A stretch of DNA of 63,981 nucleotides, counting the filler, from Octopus bimaculoides (Eukaryota), in NCBI RefSeq assembly GCF_001194135.2. It is 4 parts of 3 records of this genome, joined end to end, with 100 filler letters (N's around TTAATTAATTAA, not from the genome) between each part and the next. Parts side by side here need not be neighbours in the genome. Positions count along the whole stretch, not along the records: positions 1 to 16,205 come from NC_068985.1; 3 more parts are not named here. The stretch is one strand, 5' to 3'. The notes under the pieces were generated by a model, which was given only the letters and a program-made list of their open reading frames with translations, was not told the origin of the DNA and ran no database searches. The number at the start of each line of letters is the position of its first letter. Within the stretch, counting starts at the first letter, position 1. Positions 1 through 16,249 of this stretch are shown here, in pieces. A program made the position numbers and the translations under genes.

Positions 1-192
1 GTTTTCGTGCGGGTGACACGTAAAAGCACCCACTACACTCTCTGAGTGGTTGGCGTTAGGAAGGGCATCGAGCTGTAGAAACTCTGCCAAATCAGACTGG
101 AGCCTGGTGTTGCCATCCGGTTTCACCAGTCCTCAGTCAAATCGTCCAACCCATGCTAGCATGGAAAGCGGACGTTAAACGATAATGATGAC
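1..192 (+). mobile_element. 3' tail of the RTE-associated repeat family ending (GAT)n
   Basis: GTTGGCGTTAGGAAGGGCATC...CCAACCCATGCTAGCATGGAAAGCGGACGTTAAACGAT. Further copies at ~8170-8365(+), 9600-9760(-), 11085-11450(+), 39190-39450(-), 54725-54790(-) and 61255-61477(+). Confidence 0.8.
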
Positions 193-2975: not shown

Positions 2976-5092
2976 GATGTGTGTGTGTGTGTGTAAATAT
3001 GTATTGTGTATCTGCAAATGCATGTGAATGTTGATACTCTACTTGTCACCATTTGAACAAAGTGATGCTGACATTCCTCACTGACATTATAACTGATAGT
3101 TCTGCACTCTTGAAGACCTATAAAAATCTTTTACTTGAAAACCAGTTGAAGGTTAGTGACAGGAAGAGCATCTGGCTATAAAATTTTGCTTCAAAACCAA
3201 TTTCAATCCAGATCAAGCCATGCTAGCATGGAAAAACAGATGTTAAACAAATGAATGAACTAAATTAAACAACTTCAATGCATCTAACAATCATTGAATC
3301 CTGGGTAGTTTGATCTGTGGTTATGTAATGCAAGCAGCTGTGAAATTACAAATACTAACAGTCGTTATAATAAATCCATGTTTATATTATATTACAACAA
3401 TTATAATCATCATAATCATAAACCCCTGTCCCACAAATGTCTTGTTTCCTCTTTATGCTTTTCCCCACTATTACAATAGGCACTGTTCCTCAGAAGTGAC
3501 TGGTTTACATGTTTCCTTCACACAAGTGCTTTCAACCCACATATCTCTTCTCTCCTCTCACCACTATATTTAATACCAGAAAACTAGCACTTGTTCTATG
3601 AGATACCCAACCCTCAGAGTAAGCAACTCATGCAGAGATTTACATTTATGTGACAAACATTGGGTGGTAGATCTAACCCTTGCATGGTTTAACACCACCG
3701 CCTATATCTTGGTGGGTCATGAAGCAGACTCTACTGTTACAAGAATCCAAATCATGTTTTTGGTTTGAAGATAACTCAGACCAACACCTGCTTCTTAATT
3801 TACCTTTTCTTGGCATCATAGTGATACTGTTCGTTAGAGGGCACAGGTGGCAAGGAGTCATTCATAGAAACCTCTTACTAGATACAAAAATTTTCTGCCT
3901 TATTTGCTAGTAGGTCTACCTGTGGTCAGTGGATTACTTAACCAGGTTACTTACAGGAACCATAATAATGGTTAGTGACAATCTGTGTTGTGACATAGTC
4001 CTTCCTTTCTCCAAGACTGAAGGTCCAGCAAATGTGAATGCTACTCTTCTTTCTTTAACTGAGGGCTTCTGTATATCTTGGGAGAACATCAATCCAAACC
4101 TGTAAAGCTTTGCTTGAAAGCACACTTACTCTTATATTCTTTCAATGAGAATTACTAGACAGACAAATCACTGGATTAGTAAGATTAGGAGGAACAAGAG
4201 GAGACGGTTTTACAGATCAATGACGATGGGGAAGTATTTTCTTTTTTTAACTTGTTTCAGTCATTAGACTGCAGCCATGCTGGGGCACTGCTTTAAAGAA
4301 TTTTTAGTTGAATAAATCTTTCCCAATACTTATTGTTTTAAGCCTGATACTTATTTTATCAGTCTCTTATGCCAAACTAATGAGAATATAAACACACCAA
4401 CACCAGTTGTCAAGCAGTAAGGGAGGAAGGAAATAAACACACACACACACACAATAGGCTTCTCTTTCACTTTCTGTCCACTAAATCAATTCACTAGTCT
4501 TTGGTTGACCTGAGGCTGTAGTAGAAAACACTTGTCTAAGATGCCACGCAGTGGGACTGAATTCGGGACCACTTGGTTGGAAAGCCAACTTCTTACTACG
4601 TAGTCACATCTGCACCTGAACAAAGTTATTGAATTGCAGTCCATATGCTAGCATGGAAGGCAGATGTTAAGCGATGATGATGATGATGACTATATTTATA
4701 AATGGCATAAAAACCATTTGCTGTTATGCCATGGTGATGCATATATAAAATTAAATTCAATAACACATTCAAGACCAAACATACCCAATGTATGTGTTTT
4801 GCTTCTTTGCCAGTTCACTGCACATAGCATTTGGGGAATGACTCCTTCATTACACTGACTGTTAAAACACCTGAAAGTCATAGACAGGTGAGATGATTTA
4901 CTTCTGATCCCATTCAGAAGTGATGGATACCGATATTTCACCATTTCTGTAGCTTATCAACATCACATACCTGAATCGAATAAAGATAATCAAGCAATGT
5001 CCCAAGGAGAGAGAAGAGAGTAGAAGTTTAGCTGCCAAAAAAGGAGCAATTTGTTGCTACCCTGACAAAGATATACGAAAATATTGTCTCAC

Positions 5093-5237
5093 CTGCACCA
5101 TTACATTAAGCATGGCTCCTGGGTAAGAAATTGTCAATTTTGCTTTCTTTGGATGGGTTGTTTTGACAACGTAATTTTCTGGAAATGTTGCTGGCAATAC
5201 ACACCATATACCATCTGTGTCCAGTTCCAGAGGCCGT
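5093..5237 (-). CDS. POLE: POLE exon (catalytic motif C, DTDG)
   Basis: 145 nt, phase 2/0. Acceptor CCTTGTTAAG|A, donor GTGCAG|GTGAGA. Translates [48 protein letters not shown]. Confidence 0.98.
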
Positions 5238-5558
5238 CTTAACAAGGAATGGAAGAAAGAGAAGTAGATAACAGATGGAGGTATAATATATTAATGGTTT
5301 ACAGAACAGGTAGAAAGATATATCTTTTCAACATGTAAATACTGAGCAGTATATATATAAAGGATAAAATCCTTTTAAGAGTAGAAAAATTTGCCAGCAA
5401 CCAACCATGAGGATCAAACTCCCACCCCTCCAATATCCGGTTNNNNNNNNNNNNNNNNNNNNNNNNNNNNNNNNNNNNNNNNNNNNNNNNNNNNNNNNNN
5501 NNNNNNNNNNNNNNNNNNNNNNNNNNNNNNNNNNNNNNNNNNAGCAAATGAATAATTA

Positions 5559-5747
<189 letters not shown>

Positions 5748-7044: not shown

Positions 7045-7272
7045 TTAAACCTTTAGCGTTTAAACCAGCCATATCCGGCCCAAAATATTCTTCCTACTTT
7101 ATGGTCAAACCAACCACATCTGGTCTCTCATACTTATCCTACAGTGTCATTCTAAAAATTATCAGTTACCTCATCAAAATTGCAAATCTATAAGATAATG
7201 CAAGATTAATTCAAAACAATGAGAATAAATAGGCATTACTTTTGTCAGAGTAATCTGAATGCTAAAGGGCTG
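7045..7272. mobile_element. piggyBac-type MITE, same family as 9084-9311
   Basis: Termini TTAAACCTTTAGCG / GCTAAAGGGCTGA. Internal sequence is the reverse complement of the 9084-9311 copy. Confidence 0.55.
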
Positions 7273-8401
7273 AGGATATTTATATATATATATACAATTG
7301 TCCAAAAGAACATATCCCTGTTTAGGTTTATATGGTTAAGGAGTGAAGATGACATGCAAAAGGAAAGTCATTGGAATAAATTGATTCAAATTATAACAGA
7401 AAAAGCAAAAATAGTTAAAATAATAATAAGGAAAAATATTCAAGTTGTATAAAGCACATAAAGGGTTGTAAAACACAAAGACAAAAAAAAAAAAAAAAAA
7501 AAAAAAAAAACGTGTTGGGGAGATCAAAGATCAGGCTGGAAGTATATGTAGTCATAAAGTCACTTTATCAATTACACTGTAAGGGTGGAAGGAAATACAA
7601 GGCATCTCTATCTCCTATGCCAGCATGGAAGGCAGACATTAAACAATGACGACAATATATATACAAGCACTTGTACATACATACACACACATATATACAC
7701 ATGTAAACATATACACCTACATATAACCACACAAATATGTACATGGACTTACAAAAACAGACACTACTTAAGTAACAACTGCCACAATGATGATACCAAG
7801 ACTGACAAAGGCACAAAGCTTGAAATTTGGAAGAGGGAGGTAATCGATTACATCATCTCCATTGTTCAACTGGTACTTATTTTATCGATCCCAAAAGGAT
7901 GAAAGTCAACCTCATTGTAAAGCCAGAAGAAATTCAACTAAGTATTTTGTCAAAAGTGTTAACAATTCTGCCAACTCATTGCCTTATAATAATTATTATT
8001 ATTAGTCATACCCAACTGGTGTAGCAGCATTATAGTCAACTGCTACAAAGGTAAAGGTGATGCCTTAAACAGAAATAATTACAGAAGTATCAAATTGCTG
8101 GACCAGATCACGAAAGTTACAGAGAGGGTTTATAGCTCAACTGATTAGGAAGAGAGTTAGCCTGGATGAGATGCAGTGCCAGTGCCAAGTATAAAGCACC
8201 CAATACACTCTCTAAAGTGGTTGATGTTAGTCAGGAGATCCAGCCATGGAGACCATGCCAAGACAGACACAACTGGAGCTTGGGCAGCTCTCTGGCTAGC
8301 CAGCTCCTGTCAAACTGTCAAATGCCTACCAGCTTGGAAAATGAATGTAAAATGATGATGATGATGGCACATCACAAACAAGAATTAAAATTATTTCTTA
8401 C

Positions 8402-8696
8402 CCTTTCCTCATGACATATCCATAAAAGGAATTTAAGATACATTTATGTGCCAGTTGTAGTGAATCATACAAAACAACCATTCCATTGGCTCTTTTTATC
8501 TCTGCGGCATCTTTTGCTGCTTCAGCTTCTCCCAACTTGCGTTTCCATACCTTCACTAATCCTTTGAACTCATAGCGTCGGTCTCGAAATGCCCGAACTG
8601 TGTCAACATAGAAAGAATTTTCTCTTTGACAAATGGTAGCAACTTTTTCTCCTTTTCTTGTCACATGGATCTTCTTGTAAGCTTTCCTGCAATATT
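8402..8696 (-). CDS. POLE: POLE exon (fingers, motif B)
   Basis: 295 nt, phase 1/2. Acceptor ATGTTTCAG|AA, donor AAAGG|GTAAGA. Translates (E)[10 protein letters not shown]...[26 protein letters not shown]...[19 protein letters not shown](G). Confidence 0.98.
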
Positions 8697-8727: not shown

Positions 8728-8925
8728 CCTTTCTACTGGAGGCACAGGGCTTCGAATTTGTGGGATGGTAACTAGTCGATTATATTGACCCTAGTGTTTA
8801 ACTGGTACTTAATTTATCGATGAAAGGCAAAGTCGACCTCAGTGGAATTTGAACTCAGAACATAGCAATGGGCGAAATAACGCTAAGAATTTCGTCTGGT
8901 GCACTAATGATTCTGCCAGCTAGCC
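8728..8925 (-). mobile_element. tRNA-derived SINE (family 2)
   Basis: Reverse complement of AGCTGGCAGAATC.TTAG...GTTCTGAGTTCAAATTCC...GTCGACTTTGCCTTTC. Related copies at ~215-430(+), 7830-8060(-), 16400-16530(-) and 46715-46900(+). Confidence 0.7.
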
Positions 8926-9083
8926 ACCTTAACAAAAACAACAACAATAATAAAAACCCAAGGCATTACTCATAGGGCTGAACTTTTGCTATATTCTAGC
9001 TGTATTTAGTAGCAACACATCAAGTTTATTCCCAAACCAGTGACCTGGTCGAAATTCTTGAAACCAAAGACTAGGGGAGGGCA

Positions 9084-9311
9084 TTAACTCCTTAGCATTC
9101 AGATTATTCTGTCAAATGCAATGCTTATTTATCTGTATTGTTTTGCATTAATTATGCAGTATCAAATAGCTTGGAGACTTCATTGATGTGATTGTTTGTT
9201 TTCAGAAGGACACTGTAGTGCAGGTGTAAGGGGCCAAATCTGGTTGGTTTGAATGTAAAGTATGTAGAACATCTGGGATGGATAGGGCTAGTTTAAATGC
9301 TAAAGGGTTAA
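9084..9311. mobile_element. piggyBac-type (TTAA-flanked) MITE
   Basis: Termini TTAACTCCTTAGCATT / AATGCTAAAGGGTTAA. A related reverse-orientation copy lies at ~7045-7272. Confidence 0.6.
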
Positions 9312-10179: not shown

Positions 10180-10429
10180 CTGCCAGTCTCTTTTTCTCTA
10201 TGGCAGCTTGTTCCACAGCTGGAAGCTGGTGAAAAGCTCTTTGTGGTCCACCAGGAAAAAATGGTGGAAATTTCTCATTTTCCAATTGCTGCTGGATTCG
10301 TTGGAACTCACTTCTGGTAGCAGGCATATATTCTCCTCGCCACATCCAAGTCATCTTCCTCTGACATGTTGCACCAGGTTTGTTGAAGTCACAAGCAGCA
10401 CAAATTTCTTCATCAACCATTGCAGAAGG
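10180..10429 (-). CDS. POLE: POLE exon (P-domain, CysX cysteines)
   Basis: 250 nt, phase 0/1. Acceptor TTGTCCAG|CCT, donor GCAG|GTCAGT. Translates [37 protein letters not shown]...EKKRLA. Confidence 0.97.
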
Positions 10430-11037: not shown

Positions 11038-13512
11038 TTTTAGCATAAAGCAACCTCTCTCAATGGTCGTAGTCTTGCAAGCTGTTTAGCAACCTCACTA
11101 GTGCTGGTGGCATGAAAAATAGCATCCAGTCCACTTCAAAGTGATTGACATTAAACAGGACATCTAGTTATAGAAAGCATGTCAAAGCAAACACTTGAGT
11201 GCAATGTAGACCTCAGGCTCAGCAGATCCTGTCAAACTGTTTAACCCATGGAGACGCACTACGCTTTATAAAGTAGTCAGTGACAGAAAGGGTGTCTTGC
11301 AATAGAAACCAAGCCAAAAATGAAGTGTTTGAGTGAGACGCAGTCCCATCAACCCATCTATGAAGGTAGTAACTCTAACATTTGATTTGGACCCTGCTGA
11401 CCAACTCAAGCCAATATGCAAAGCAGACATAAATGATGATGATATGGTTACCATAAATATATTGGAAATTCAGTAATTCTTATAACAAATGAGTCACAGT
11501 TCCCCAACCCATCAATGAAGGAAGTAACTCAGAATAAGAATTGACTCAAGTCATGGCAACTCATCAAATCCATGCAAGCATGGAAAGCAGACATAAATGA
11601 TGATGATAATAATCATGGCTCATTCACAAGTTTGCATCTGTTATGTCTCTTCAATGAAGTACAATAGTGGTAAGGGGATTAAAACTTCAAATCTTACACA
11701 ATTAGTGTTAAGTCCTTTTGTTTTGCTTCATATCTATGTCCACTTTATTTTTCATGCCAGCACGGACGCCTTAATTTTTTTCATACAAACCCACCTGAAA
11801 CTGTCACTTGGTTCTACAATACAAACTTCCTGTTTTAAAGTCAAATAAATTAAAACTTCCCATGTAGTGCACCTGAGCACTTTATATGATAAGCTCATTA
11901 ATTCATAAAATTTCATGTTAATTTATGTTCCAAACACCAACTTTTCTGAACTATGTCTGCATATATCCATCACCCTGACAATGATGATGATGATGACAAT
12001 GACAACAACAACGATGATGATAATGAATAGCTGATGCAAGGAAGTACATGCAACAGTATCAAAACAAAAAAAAAAAANNNNNNNNNNGTTACGGGGACAT
12101 AAACACACCAACATCGGTTGTCAAGCGATAGTGGGGGACAAACACACACACACAACCATATATACGACAGGCTTCTTTCAGTTTGTCTACCAAATCCTCT
12201 CACAAGGCTTTGGTTGGCCTGAGGCTATAGTAAAAGACACTTGCCCAAGGTGCCACAGTGGGAATGAACCTGGAACCATGTGGTTGGGAAGCAAGCTTCT
12301 TACCACACAGCCAAATTGAGCAATGGTGAACATAAAAATGTGCATGGTTAAGAATTGGATACTTTGATTTCAAAAAGTGAAACAAGTGATTCGGACAACA
12401 GTTCTGATAGCAATAAAGAAAATAAATTTGTACCAGAACAGAGTAAGAATTAAAAAAAATTTTAGTGATTTTTTGGAAGAAGAGTGAACCTTGCTACTGT
12501 CTTTCCAAGGAAATGAAACTGTTAGATTAATTAAAAAAAAATTTTCCACTTAATTTGTTTGAAGCAACCACTGGAAATGAATCATTAAACAAAGAGGAAA
12601 CCTGAGCACTTTTTGCCATCTTATAGTAATTCTACTTGTTTCTCTGTTGACGGGAGGGAATGGTGGATGATGGAGGGAAGATGGAGAGGAAAAAGAGAGG
12701 GGAAGATGGTAGTGAGTGAAATGTGTAAGCCTGTCTGTAGAGATTTCATGTGATTATTTGAAGGGAAAGGTGAAGAGCGAAAGAAAAAGGAGAAAAAGAG
12801 GGTAAGGTGAAGAGTGAGAGGGAAAGAGAGTGCGAGTGCTGTGTATTAAGTCTATAAAATTATGCATAATGTATATAAAGTGTATATATAAAATGCATTA
12901 AGTAACCATTATATTCCAGTTTCCATCACTTTTCAATGATTAGCAGATGAGCGACTATCTTTTGATAGAGACGCAACACAGGCAACGCTTTCAGGTTTTT
13001 TAGATAAAGTTTTCAGAAATAACTCAATAAGTTTACCATTAATTCCATGAAATATTCACAGGTCCTGCTAGTCAACATTATTACAGGCATAAGAAAACTA
13101 TTCAGAATTACAAACTGACAGATAATCCTGTAATTTGTGCAATTCTTTTGTATTAAAATTTTGTCATATACCCAATTGAATATTAGCTAATGTTTCATTT
13201 TCTATGGTGATGTTTAAACAAAATTTTAATAATTTTGTATTTTCTTGAATTTACTTATATTTACTTGTAATTAGATTTGCTTTGAGACAAAAATTATGAA
13301 ACAGATTTGGCTTGGAACCTTTTGTTAAATTGTGATCCAAAAATCACATTAATATGTTGATAAATAAAAAGTTAGGTGTATTTTGTTTAGAAATATAATA
13401 ACAGGATTAAACATAAATTTACATAAAAGAATAAGTATTATAAAAGAAACAAGAAATAATAAACCATGTTAATCTGTGAAGAAAGAAGATTTGTTTTAGA
13501 ACGACAAAATAC

Positions 13513-13749
13513 CTGAAGTCGGTTGGTGAGAATAATATTTGGATACATAGCACCAACATCTAAATGGTAAATTATTGGGTTTTCTAAACGGTTTGGACAA
13601 TCTCTCAACATAGCCAATCGGTCTTTAATATCTTCACAAACTTCATCAAAGTTGGTTACTTGTTCCAAGGACACTTTCTCTTCAACTTCTATTGCATGTT
13701 TCATGGTTTTCTCAACAGTATTCATAAGAGTCTGGAAAGCATCAGGTAC
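13513..13749 (-). CDS. POLE: DNA polymerase epsilon catalytic subunit, exon (most 5' exon visible), polymerase motif A
   Basis: 237 nt, phase 0/0. Acceptor TTCTGTTGTAG|GTACCT, donor CTTCAG|GTATTT. Translates [26 protein letters not shown]...[22 protein letters not shown], containing the Pol epsilon motif A ([10 protein letters not shown]). Confidence 0.97.
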
Positions 13750-13964
13750 CTACAACAGAACAAATATATACAGTTGACGTCTTTCAATAGATAAGGTATA
13801 CACCAGAACATCAGCATCAGGTACCTACAACAGAACAAATATATACAGTTGACGTCTTTCAAAAGATAAGGTATACACCAGAACATCAGCATCAGGTACC
13901 TACAACAGAACAAATATATACAGTTGACGTCTTTCAAAAGATAAGGTATACACCAGAACATCAG
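13738..13964. repeat. 75-bp tandem repeat, 3 copies visible and running into a gap, overlapping the POLE 3' splice site
   Basis: The unit AGCATCAGGTACCTACAACAGAACAAATATATACAGTTGACGTCTTTCAA(T/A)AGATAAGGTATACACCAGAACATC recurs at 13738, 13813 and 13888 with one substitution. Confidence 0.95.
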
Positions 13965-16249
13965 NNNNNNNNNNNNNNNNNNNNNNNNNNNNNNNNNNNN
14001 NNNNNNNNNNNNNNNNNNNNNNNNNNNNNNNNNNNNNNNNNNNNNNNNNNNNNNNNNNNNNNNNNNNNNNNNNNNNNNNNNNNNNNNNNNNNNNNNNNNN
14101 NNNNNNNNNNNNNNNNNNNNNNNNNNNNNNNNNNNNNNNNNNNNNNNNNNNNNNNNNNNNNNNNNNNNNNNNNNNNNNNNNNNNNNNNNNNNNNNNNNNN
14201 NNNNNNNNNNNNNNNNNNNNNNNNNNNNNNNNNNNNNNNNNNNNNNNNNNNNNNNNNNNNNNNNNNNNNNNNNNNNNNNNNNNNNNNNNNNNNNNNNNNN
14301 NNNNNNNNNNNNNNNNNNNNNNNNNNNNNNNNNNNNNNNNNNNNNNNNNNNNNNNNNNNNNNNNNNNNNNNNNNNNNNNNNNNNNNNNNNNNNNNNNNNN
14401 NNNNNNNNNNNNNNNNNNNNNNNNNNNNNNNNNNNNNNNNNNNNNNNNNNNNNNNNNNNNNNNNNNNNNNNNNNNNNNNNNNNNNNNNNNNNNNNNNNNN
14501 NNNNNNNNNNNNNNNNNNNNNNNNNNNNNNNNNNNNNNNNNNNNNNNNNNNNNNNNNNNNNNNNNNNNNNNNNNNNNNNNNNNNNNNNNNNNNNNNNNNN
14601 NNNNNNNNNNNNNNNNNNNNNNNNNNNNNNNNNNNNNNNNNNNNNNNNNNNNNNNNNNNNNNNNNNNNNNNNNNNNNNNNNNNNNNNNNNNNNNNNNNNN
14701 NNNNNNNNNNNNNNNNNNNNNNNNNNNNNNNNNNNNNNNNNNNNNNNNNNNNNNNNNNNNNNNNNNNNNNNNNNNNNNNNNNNNNNNNNNNNNNNNNNNN
14801 NNNNNNNNNNNNNNNNNNNNNNNNNNNNNNNNNNNNNNNNNNNNNNNNNNNNNNNNNNNNNNNNNNNNNNNNNNNNNNNNNNGCGACTGCGCGTTCAGGA
14901 CCACTCTGCTTTAGTGGTACCCTTATACTCTGTGTGTTTTCAAACGCATGGATATAGGTGTCAAATTTGTTCCAATAACTTTCGAGTGATAGATAGAGAG
15001 AGAGAGACAGACAGACAGACAGATAGCTCGCTTCAGCCAGTCATGGTATTAGCTGTCAGTAGCCAAAGAATCAACTCAAACCAGCAGTAACGTTCCTTCA
15101 GATTTTTCTACTTTCACTTCTGACAGCTAATACCATGACAGTGCCAATTTTTGTAATGCAAGTATGTAAATATAAAAAGAGTTTATTTGTTAATCAAAAT
15201 TGGCAACTCAGTTTTTGAATGTATTACTTGAATCCCATAAATTTTAAAAATTTCTTTATGCTTTGAAGAGAGAAAATGAAAGAGAAGAGAAAGTGAAACC
15301 ATGACATTTGCTTTGAAGTGAGAGCAGAAAGTAAAAGAAAAGAGAAAGTGAAAGATGTATGTACATGTATATGAAATGTGTGTGTGTGTGCGTGCATGAG
15401 AGAGAGGAGAGTGAGTGAAGGTGTGTTGTTATGTGTAAGTGGTACTCACTCAGTCTTTCTCTGTCCTGCACACACATCTTTTATATATACATACATAAAT
15501 ACATATGCATACATCTTTTTTGTATATATGTGTGTGTGCATGTGAGAGAGAGAGAGAGAGAGAGAGTGAGTGACTATTTCCTCATAATATATAGAGAAAT
15601 GGATATCTTTTAAGGAACACACTCATAGAAAATGTGATGATATTGTCATGGTATAAAATGTTTATGATAATTGACTTATAGAAAAGATGATAATGTAAAA
15701 TTTTTGTAATGTAAATATGTAAATGAAAATTAAGTTTATTTGGTAGTCGTAAGATAACTGGATCTTTTGATACCCTATACGTCAAAACTGGAAACTCAGT
15801 TTTTAAATGCATAAGGAAGAGATGCACACACACACACACACACATAAAAACTCTCTTTTATATATATATATATGGAAGTGTCCCTGTCTATTTCTTAAAT
15901 TTTCTGTGTGTTTATCTCTTCCTGTCGCCTCACCTTCCCTAATATCAGCCACCCTCATTATACCATATTTCCCTGAACCTAACATTTTTGCAGCCCTCTC
16001 ATTTTAACCCTGTAGTTGGTCCATTATTGATTTTTATTGAAATCCAATTAGCCTATAATTGAACTAGATCTTAGTTCAACATGTATACAAAGTTTGGTGA
16101 AAATTAGTTCCCTGGTTTGGGCAGCATGAGAGTAACAGACAGACAGAAATTGCCATTTATATTTAAGATATATGATGGGCTTCTTTCAGTTTCTGCTTAC
16201 CAAATNNNNNNNNNNNNNNNNNNNNNNNNNNNNNNNNNNNNNNNNNNNN

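What the first reader, a model, noticed from the sequence alone, without database searches (positions are those of the whole stretch)
13738..13964. Minisatellite built from POLE's own 3' splice site: tandem decoy acceptors that each lead to a stop codon
Seen: on the minus strand each 75-nt unit ends TATATTTGTTCTGTTGTAG and is followed by GTACCTGATGCT. This is the same pyrimidine tract, AG and first 12 exon nucleotides as the real acceptor at 13750-13751. Identical acceptors therefore sit at 13825-13826 and 13900-13901, and the array continues into a 918-N gap. The unit is exactly 25 codons. Splicing to a decoy reads VPDADVLVYTLS(F/I)ERRQLYIFVLL*, so the next acceptor's TAG becomes an in-frame premature stop. 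A CATCAG microhomology at the unit junction (AACATCAG|CATCAG) suggests a slippage origin. Inference: an essential replicative polymerase must select the most distal of at least 3 identical acceptors, or lose transcript to NMD. Copy number could tune POLE dosage. The repeated AG|GT could also allow stepwise (recursive-type) splicing.
Basis: partly seen in the sequence, partly recalled or inferred. Interest (0 to 1): 0.72.

Follow-up and report, generated by a model that had tools for sequence, protein, structure and literature searches.

The report
Tandemly triplicated POLE splice acceptor
A 75-base stretch spanning the end of an intron and the first 12 bases of a DNA polymerase epsilon exon is repeated three times head to tail beside an assembly gap, which gives two extra look-alike splice acceptors; it is most likely a young, largely harmless duplication, and neither its true copy number nor any use in splicing could be tested here.

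Summary
Bases 13738-13964 are 3.03 head-to-tail copies of a 75-nt unit with 1 mismatch in 225 nt. On the minus strand each unit is the last 63 nt of an intron plus the first 12 nt of an exon. The exon (13749-13513) is POLE, the DNA polymerase epsilon catalytic subunit: five spliced exons match human POLE residues 564-901 at E 7e-183. Identical AG acceptors sit at 13751-13750, 13826-13825 and 13901-13900. Splicing to either upstream copy reads 24 codons and then an in-frame TAG.

What is not shown:
- The contig ends inside the array at a 918-N gap, and the far flank has no unit. Continuation into the gap and copy number are unknown.
- A 101-nt exact self-overlap means short reads cannot count copies. 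Two copies plus a heterozygous A/T site could mimic three.
- No same-species DNA or RNA was retrievable, so use of the decoys, NMD, dosage tuning and recursive splicing remain untested inference.
- The in-frame stop follows automatically from a phase-0 TAG acceptor and a unit length divisible by 3.
- The doubled CATCAG at the unit junction is not a slippage signature.
- The closest retrievable orthologue has a single acceptor.

Best reading: a young, lineage-specific intronic tandem duplication that leaves the coding sequence intact. Interest is modest.

The parts
13738..13964 (-). 75-nt tandem array, 3.03 copies. Each unit is 63 nt of intron 3' end plus the first 12 nt of the exon.
   Evidence: TRF. 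Units in register. The 24-mer acceptor pattern occurs 3 times.
13738..13812 (-). Unit 1, exon-proximal. It holds the authentic acceptor (AG at 13751-13750, minus strand) and has A at 13788.
   Evidence: Homology to POLE starts at 13749.
13813..13887 (-). Unit 2. Look-alike acceptor with AG at 13826-13825 and T at 13863. An exon starting at 13824 would be 312 nt long and meet an in-frame TAG at 13752-13750.
13888..13962 (-). Unit 3. Look-alike acceptor with AG at 13901-13900 and T at 13938. An exon starting at 13899 would meet an in-frame TAG at 13827-13825.
13788..13788 (-). The only difference among the units. The minus strand has A here (-38 from the real acceptor) where units 2 and 3 have T.
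13965..14882 (.). 918-N assembly gap directly 5' (in the gene's sense) of the array. The array's 5' boundary lies in it.
   Evidence: No unit sequence beyond the gap.
13513..13749 (-). POLE exon of 79 codons, VPDAFQ...[18 protein letters not shown] (polymerase motif A). Its donor is CAG|GTATTT at 13512.
10180..10429 (-). Next POLE exon ([15 protein letters not shown]...KKRLA).
8402..8696 (-). POLE exon (EYCRKAYKK...YGYVMRKG).
5644..5736 (-). POLE exon ([31 protein letters not shown]).
5093..5237 (-). POLE exon ([15 protein letters not shown]...MLNVMVQ).

Best explanation
This is a young, lineage-specific tandem duplication (a small minisatellite) of the 75-bp segment that straddles the 3' splice site of a POLE intron. 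The duplicated block ends 12 nt inside the exon and the last copy is followed by the intact exon. The extra copies therefore only lengthen the intron at its 3' end, and the coding sequence is untouched.

Each extra copy carries a candidate branch site, the pyrimidine tract, the AG and 12 exon bases, so it is a potential competing acceptor. Using one would add 75 or 150 nt with an in-frame TAG. Such transcripts should be removed by nonsense-mediated decay.

My inference is that the exon-proximal copy does most of the work. It alone is followed by real exon sequence, and it gives the shortest exon (237 nt against 312 and 387 nt) for exon definition with the donor at 13512. Any leak to the upstream copies would be either degraded or repaired by removal of the 75-nt GT...AG block.

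Shown: the anatomy and the gene identity. Inferred: the splicing outcome. The copy number is at least 2 and nominally 3, and the true value is unknown.
For: - Repeat anatomy, near-identity and uniqueness in the piece.
- POLE identity and an open spliced frame over five GT-AG exons.
- The exon boundary is a conserved phase-0 intron position in relatives.
- The nearest retrievable orthologue (L003, 81% amino-acid identity) has one acceptor, an unalignable intron and no tandem repeat, so the array is not ancient.
- The unit-to-unit junction shares only a short motif with the real exon junction. Collapse of a de Bruijn graph cannot create it, so reads with that junction must exist (inference from the sequence).
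- The copies are contiguous and no copy lies across the gap, unlike the usual false-duplication pattern (PMC9516828).
- Contig breaks at the other gaps in this piece are also at hard sequence, for example an A12 run. This fits a real repeat that stopped the assembler.
- Literature shows tandem AG|GT duplications can be spliced out, at 6-16% efficiency with a minimum length of about 60 nt (PMC3265369).
Against: - No reads, long-read assembly or transcripts of this species could be reached.
- The array sits at a contig end next to a gap. It contains a 101-nt exact self-overlap, so the copy number is not trustworthy.
- In a human reporter library, two equally strong tandem acceptors showed no preference by order (PMC6783452). 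In a BRCA1 intron 9/exon 10 tandem duplication, the duplicated block, intron part included, was detected in the mRNA (PMC11839443).
- Decoy use could therefore be large. That would be costly for an essential gene, and it raises the chance that the array is heterozygous or over-counted.
Confidence: 0.6

Rival explanations
1. Assembly artefact or over-count. The genome has one copy, or two, and local extension or gap closing at the contig end looped through a short duplication. A heterozygous A/T site may have helped, producing extra copies before the contig was abandoned at the gap.
For: - The array ends exactly at a contig end beside a 918-N gap.
- Units 2 and 3 are identical, and the exact self-overlap is 101 nt and is cut off by the contig end. 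No read of about 100 nt can fix the copy number.
- A T-unit followed by a T-unit could come from a second haplotype whose proximal copy has T.
- Draft assemblies do contain false duplications linked to heterozygosity and gaps (PMC9516828).
Against: - The unit-to-unit junction cannot arise from k-mer collapse, because the shared motif is only 6 nt. At least one extra copy is therefore very likely real.
- The copies are not separated by a gap, and nothing across the gap repeats them. This is unlike the reported signature of false duplications.
Confidence: 0.25
2. Functional decoy array. The repeated acceptors are used at a substantial rate, so copy number sets POLE output through NMD. Alternatively, the AG|GT sites act as recursive splice sites, so the intron's end is removed in 75-nt steps.
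For: - Each unit is an exact copy of a working acceptor from -63 to +12.
- Equal-strength tandem acceptors are both used in reporters (PMC6783452).
- The regenerated donor GTACCT matches the intron-side consensus no worse than this exon's own donor GTATTT.
- A 75-nt GT...AG block exceeds the roughly 60-nt minimum intron length cited in PMC3265369.
Against: - There are no expression data.
- There is no conservation: the nearest orthologue has a single acceptor.
- The near-identity of the copies points to a recent event rather than a maintained device.
- GTACCT lacks +4A and +5G, and the exon-side bases of the regenerated donor are unknown because the upstream exon is not in the piece.
- Known recursive sites lie deep in very long introns, not within 150 nt of the exon (own knowledge).
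- The array shows no RNA structure that could mask copies (z = -0.22).
Confidence: 0.1

Closest known systems
Intron creation by tandem duplication of an AG|GT site (Rogers model; Hellsten et al. 2011, PMC3265369)
   Same: A tandem duplication contains AGGT. The GT of the upstream copy and the AG of the downstream copy bracket exactly one unit, so removing it restores the original message. The 75-nt unit is above the roughly 60-nt minimum the paper cites.
   Different: In that model the AGGT lies inside coding sequence and a new intron is born. Here the AG|GT is an existing intron-exon junction, so no new intron is needed: the copies join the old intron if the last acceptor is used. The donor-like GTACCT is poor. 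No splicing was observed here.
Disease-type tandem duplications spanning an intron-exon boundary (for example BRCA1 intron 9/exon 10, PMC11839443)
   Same: The duplicated block is the end of an intron plus the start of an exon. The acceptor is duplicated, and retention of the block in mRNA gives a premature stop.
   Different: The BRCA1 block carries 1617 nt of exon, which is then interrupted by the duplicated intron piece. Here only 12 exon nt are copied and the array lies wholly upstream of an intact exon, so normal mRNA remains possible.
Competing tandem 3' splice sites (alternative acceptors; designed libraries, PMC6783452)
   Same: Two or more acceptors lie a short distance apart and compete for one donor. 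With equal strength, no order preference was seen in human cells.
   Different: Natural tandem acceptors differ in sequence and are mostly 3-59 nt apart. Here whole 3' splice-site modules are exact copies 75 nt apart. Their use is unknown.
Recursive splice sites (ratchet points) of long introns
   Same: An acceptor is directly followed by GT (AG|GT), so splicing to it regenerates a donor-like sequence.
   Different: The consensus is a pyrimidine tract followed by CAG|GTAAGT, usually conserved and deep in very long introns (own knowledge). Here the site is TAG|GTACCT, within 150 nt of the exon, and not conserved.
Intronic minisatellites (VNTRs)
   Same: A head-to-tail array with a 75-bp unit, nearly identical copies, in an intron, at a place where a short-read assembly breaks.
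   Different: Only 3 copies are seen. Polymorphism is not tested. The unit is derived from the gene's own splice junction rather than from anonymous intron sequence.

Membership tests
DNA polymerase epsilon catalytic subunit (POLE) | Sequence homology to POLE across the polymerase (palm) region, including motif A | tested here: met
   The spliced 340 aa match human POLE residues 564-901 at E 7e-183. Pfam DNA_pol_B scores 37 bits against a cut-off of 23. Database relatives are named DNA polymerase epsilon subunit 1.
Minisatellite / VNTR | Head-to-tail array of a 10-100 bp unit | tested here: met
   Period 75, 3.03 copies, 99% identity, no indels.
Minisatellite / VNTR | Variable copy number among alleles or individuals | not testable with these tools
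   No reads or second assembly of the species were reachable.
Competing (decoy) 3' splice sites | Branch-site-like motif, pyrimidine tract and AG in each copy | tested here: met
   Each unit equals the real acceptor from -63 to +12. CTTAT lies at -42. The only AGs in the unit are at positions 31 and 62. Pyrimidines are 12/18 at -20..-3, within the range of the gene's other acceptors, 11-15/18. This is motif-level evidence only.
Competing (decoy) 3' splice sites | Observed use in transcripts | not testable with these tools
   No transcript data for this species are in any collection searched.
Recursive splice site | Acceptor fused to a strong donor (consensus CAG|GTAAGT) | tested here: inconclusive
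   TAG|GTACCT matches GT, +3A and +6T only. This exon's own working donor, GTATTT, has equally few intron-side matches. The exon-side bases of the regenerated donor are unknown, because the upstream exon is absent from the piece.
Recursive splice site | Evolutionary conservation of the site | tested here: not met
   The nearest retrievable orthologue has a single acceptor and no repeat. No close (same-order) relative was available.
AGGT tandem-duplication intron (Rogers/Hellsten) | Tandem duplicate containing AGGT, with a unit longer than the minimal intron, whose removal restores the frame | tested here: met
   The unit is 75 nt. GT at 13824/13899 to AG at 13750 brackets exactly 75 or 150 nt. 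The roughly 60-nt minimum is from PMC3265369.
AGGT tandem-duplication intron (Rogers/Hellsten) | The duplicate is actually spliced out as an intron | not testable with these tools
   No RNA data.
False duplication in a draft assembly | Copies separated by an assembly gap | tested here: not met
   The copies are contiguous, and no 12-mer is shared across the 918-N gap. The criterion is from PMC9516828.
False duplication in a draft assembly | Haploid or low read depth, with heterozygous k-mers in the copies | not testable with these tools
   Reads are not available. The single A/T difference could be either a difference between copies or a heterozygous site.

The most novel reading that the evidence does not exclude
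The array is real and longer than three units. POLE pre-mRNA is then routinely spliced to upstream copies and either rescued by stepwise removal of 75-nt GT...AG blocks (a natural recursive-splicing ladder made from the gene's own acceptor) or lost to NMD. In the second case, minisatellite copy number would set the dosage of an essential replicative polymerase.
Probability: 0.08. Interest if true: 0.65.

Novelty: new member of a known kind. Interest (0 to 1): 0.3.

Why it matters
If the array is real, it is a natural experiment in 3' splice-site choice. It offers two or more exact copies of a working acceptor, 75 nt apart, in front of an exon that encodes the catalytic motif A of an essential polymerase. 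It would show how far exon context alone decides between identical acceptors. It would also show whether an AG|GT tandem duplication is tolerated through NMD or through re-splicing, which bears on the tandem-duplication model of intron change. If it is an assembly over-count, it is a reminder that tandem structure at contig ends beside gaps should not be interpreted without reads.

Tried and rejected
- **Exact-product look-ups.** Two window ORFs (the exon E1 ORF and the exon E3 ORF) found nothing on record.
- **Protein searches.** Two searches were run, one with spliced E1+E2 and one with the E1 genomic ORF. The best hits were only 76-88% identical, so no same-species or close-relative contig or transcript is reachable.
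- **Metagenome scans.** Scans for the acceptor 24-mer and, as a control, for an exon-internal 38-mer both gave 0 hits. A prokaryote genome scan also gave 0, as expected for an animal gene.
- **Upstream exon.** The exon ending ...GVFRxDIPCRFRL was looked for in 14883-16205 and not found. It lies beyond the piece or in the gap, so the exon-side bases of any regenerated donor are unknown.
- **Structure masking the decoys.** Rejected: the fold of the array gives z = -0.22 against shuffles.
- **Unit as part of a dispersed repeat family.** Rejected: there is no other copy in the piece, although many other interspersed repeats are present.
- **Known RNA family.** None at Rfam gathering thresholds.
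- **CATCAG hexamer as slippage microhomology.** Rejected on geometry: the two hexamers lie side by side, and slippage between them predicts a 69-nt unit.
- **P0001 loci (L001, L002).** These turned out to be a compact, intron-poor POLE with no intron at this position, so they could not serve as an orthologous-intron comparison.
- **Copy numerology.** I noted that the 75-nt period and the 101-nt self-overlap resemble common read lengths. I could not turn this into evidence either way.

Full report
**1. What is in the sequence.**
Tandem Repeats Finder reports one strong array in the 16.2-kb piece: 13738-13964, period 75, 3.0 copies, 99% matches, no indels, score 447. The next best array scores 89. 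Read on the minus strand, the units lie at 13962-13888, 13887-13813 and 13812-13738. They differ at a single position: unit position 25 is T at 13938 and 13863, and A at 13788 in the copy next to the exon.

Each unit is GATGTT...TATATATTTGTTCTGTTGTAG (63 nt) followed by GTACCTGATGCT (12 nt). The 24-mer covering the tract, the AG and the 12 following bases occurs exactly three times. No match appeared in 200 shuffles, even with three mismatches allowed. No other part of the piece resembles the unit. The array abuts a run of 918 N at 13965-14882.

**2. The gene.**
Five GT-AG exons on the minus strand join into one open frame of 340 codons. They are 13749-13513, 10429-10180, 8696-8402, 5736-5644 and 5237-5093. 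The product matches human DNA polymerase epsilon catalytic subunit residues 564-901 at E 7e-183. It passes Pfam DNA_pol_B. Its database relatives are named polymerase epsilon subunit 1.

The exon behind the array encodes [18 protein letters not shown], the motif A region of the polymerase. Its start at 13749 is secure for three reasons:
- Homology begins at VPDAF.
- The codon directly upstream is an in-frame TAG.
- Genomic ORFs from several other animals break at the same place. Examples are ...FLIQ|VPDAFDTL...FFK|VPEAFQNL and ...NFQ|VPEAFQKL. One relative carries a retained short intron between RFKL and VPEIF.

The intron is therefore an old phase-0 intron. The preceding exon (...GVFRxDIPCRFRL) is not in 14883-16205. 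The intron is thus longer than about 2.4 kb, unless that exon lies in the gap.

**3. What the array is.**
It is a tandem duplication of the block from intron position -63 to exon position +12. The last copy runs straight into the intact exon, so the coding sequence is undamaged. If the last acceptor is used, the extra copies are simply intron.

Each extra copy is a full replica of the 3' splice-site region:
- A YTNAY match (CTTAT) lies at -42.
- The only AGs are at unit positions 31 and 62.
- The pyrimidine content at -20..-3 is 12/18, within the 11-15/18 range of the gene's other four acceptors.

These are motif-level statements. Branch-site use was not and cannot be tested here.

**4. Is it real?**
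Three points argue for a real duplication:
- The unit-to-unit junction (GTACCTGATGCT|GATGTTCTGG) shares only a 6-nt motif with the true exon junction. Graph collapse cannot manufacture it, so reads carrying it must exist (my inference).
- The copies are contiguous, and the sequence across the gap shares no 12-mer with them. False duplications described in draft assemblies are typically separated by a gap and show haploid depth (PMC9516828).
- Another gap in the piece follows an A12 run. Gaps here therefore mark hard sequence, which fits a repeat that stopped the assembler.

Three points argue for caution:
- The contig ends inside the array.
- The longest exact self-overlap is 101 nt (13789-13889 = 13864-13964) and is cut off by the contig end, so reads of about 100 nt cannot count copies.
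- A T-unit followed by a T-unit could come from a second haplotype whose proximal copy carries T. The safe minimum is therefore two copies, meaning one extra acceptor.

Whether the array continues into the gap is unknown. Only CT, 2 nt of a possible fourth unit, is visible. I put the chance that at least one extra copy is real at about 0.75-0.8.

**5.
- The in-frame stop is automatic. The acceptor is TAG|G in a phase-0 intron, so its TAG is in frame with the exon, and any unit length divisible by three keeps it in frame.
- The doubled CATCAG (CTGATGCTGATG on the gene strand) is not a junction microhomology. A microhomology-mediated duplication leaves one shared copy at the junction, and slippage between the two CTGATG sites would give a 69-nt unit. 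Here the unit merely begins (counting the preceding CT) and ends with the hexamer. The true breakpoint homology can be at most CT, and the array's 5' edge is unseen.
- 'Octopod' could not be tested.

**6. How it most likely works (inference).**
The exon-proximal copy differs from the others in three ways:
- the A at -38;
- everything from +13 onward, which is real exon rather than another intron-like unit;
- the distance to the donor at 13512, which gives exons of 237 nt against 312 and 387 nt.

Introns in this gene are kilobases long (3083, 1483 and 2665 nt). In such genes, exon definition (established knowledge) should favour the shortest, exon-backed choice. Some leak to the upstream copies is nevertheless to be expected. 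In a human designed library, two equally strong tandem acceptors showed no preference by order (PMC6783452). In a BRCA1 tandem duplication of intron 9 plus part of exon 10, the duplicated block, intron part included, was detected in the mRNA (PMC11839443).

Leaked transcripts would stop after 24 extra codons, far upstream of many exon junctions. They should therefore be NMD targets (established rule, not tested here). A second route is re-splicing. GT at 13824 or 13899 and AG at 13751-13750 bracket exactly 75 or 150 nt. This is the geometry of the AGGT tandem-duplication model, in which such a block was spliced out at 6-16% in human cells (PMC3265369). GTACCT is a poor donor, but this exon's own working donor GTATTT has equally few intron-side matches, so the route cannot be dismissed. 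The array has no RNA structure that could hide copies (z = -0.22).

**7. Comparison with relatives.**
No sequence of the same or a closely related species could be reached. Exact-product look-ups failed. Two protein searches gave at best 76-88% identity. DNA scans of metagenomes found neither the acceptor nor an exon-internal control.

The closest genomic orthologue (L003, a Logan contig, 81% amino-acid identity) has the same exon boundaries, with the exon starting CAG|GTCCCTGATGCC. It has one acceptor, an unalignable intron, and no tandem repeat near the acceptor. Other relatives whose ORFs read up to 29 codons into the intron show no repeated VP(D/E)A start either. The array is therefore not an old conserved feature. 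Its near-perfect copies point to a recent event.

**8. Verdict.**

The array is best filed as a new instance of known kinds of event: an intragenic tandem duplication across an intron-exon boundary, or equivalently an intronic minisatellite. Its notable feature is that each unit is a working acceptor of an essential gene.

| Reading | Confidence |
|---|---|
| Real and largely silent | about 0.6 |
| Assembly artefact or over-count | about 0.25 |
| Functional decoy or recursive device | about 0.1 |

Interest is 0.3.

Noticed in passing
window 138-178, 4630-4670, 7602-7642, 8311-8351, 11393-11433, 11557-11597; also 2675-2732 / 12256-12313, 2664-2759 / 4522-4617, 7080-7265 / 9092-9277, 193-326 / 8819-8952: The POLE introns are full of diverged interspersed repeats in both orientations, 60-90% identical. 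One family has a 41-nt core (...ATGCTAGCATGGAAAGCAGACRTTAA), in at least one copy (4630-4699) followed by a GAT microsatellite. They look like a SINE-type family. There was no Rfam hit at gathering thresholds.
   Followed up: partly
window 15040-15068 and 15111-15139: A 29-nt inverted repeat, 90% complementary with a 42-nt spacer, lies in the intron about 160 nt beyond the far side of the 918-N gap. A (GACA)n/(GA)n microsatellite lies beside it at 14991-15023.
   Followed up: no
window 12078-12087 and 5443-5542: The two other gaps are a 10-N gap directly after an A12 run and a 100-N gap in the intron between the exons at 5644 and 5237. Neither has tandem or cross-gap duplication at its edges.
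   Followed up: yes
window 13507-13512 and 5638-5643 (minus strand): Two working POLE donors are far from consensus: CAG|GTATTT and AGG|GTTGGT. Weak-looking donors are therefore tolerated in this gene.
   Followed up: partly
window 13745-13752, 13820-13827, 13895-13902: The splice junction sequence AGGTACCT is an 8-nt palindrome containing a KpnI site (GGTACC). It is repeated with each unit, which is handy for a restriction-based copy-number check.
   Followed up: no
window 13722-13961 (minus strand, another frame): One reading frame runs open through all three units, giving a 79-aa ORF ([25 protein letters not shown] repeated). This is a by-product of the repeat and has no sign of being a gene.
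   Followed up: no
L001 and L002 (GCA_029979865.1, GCA_013332795.1): The best protein hit to the spliced query, P0001, comes from a compact, intron-poor POLE gene of an unidentified eukaryote. That gene has no intron at the RL|VP position or at the NRLQ|PS position.
   Followed up: partly
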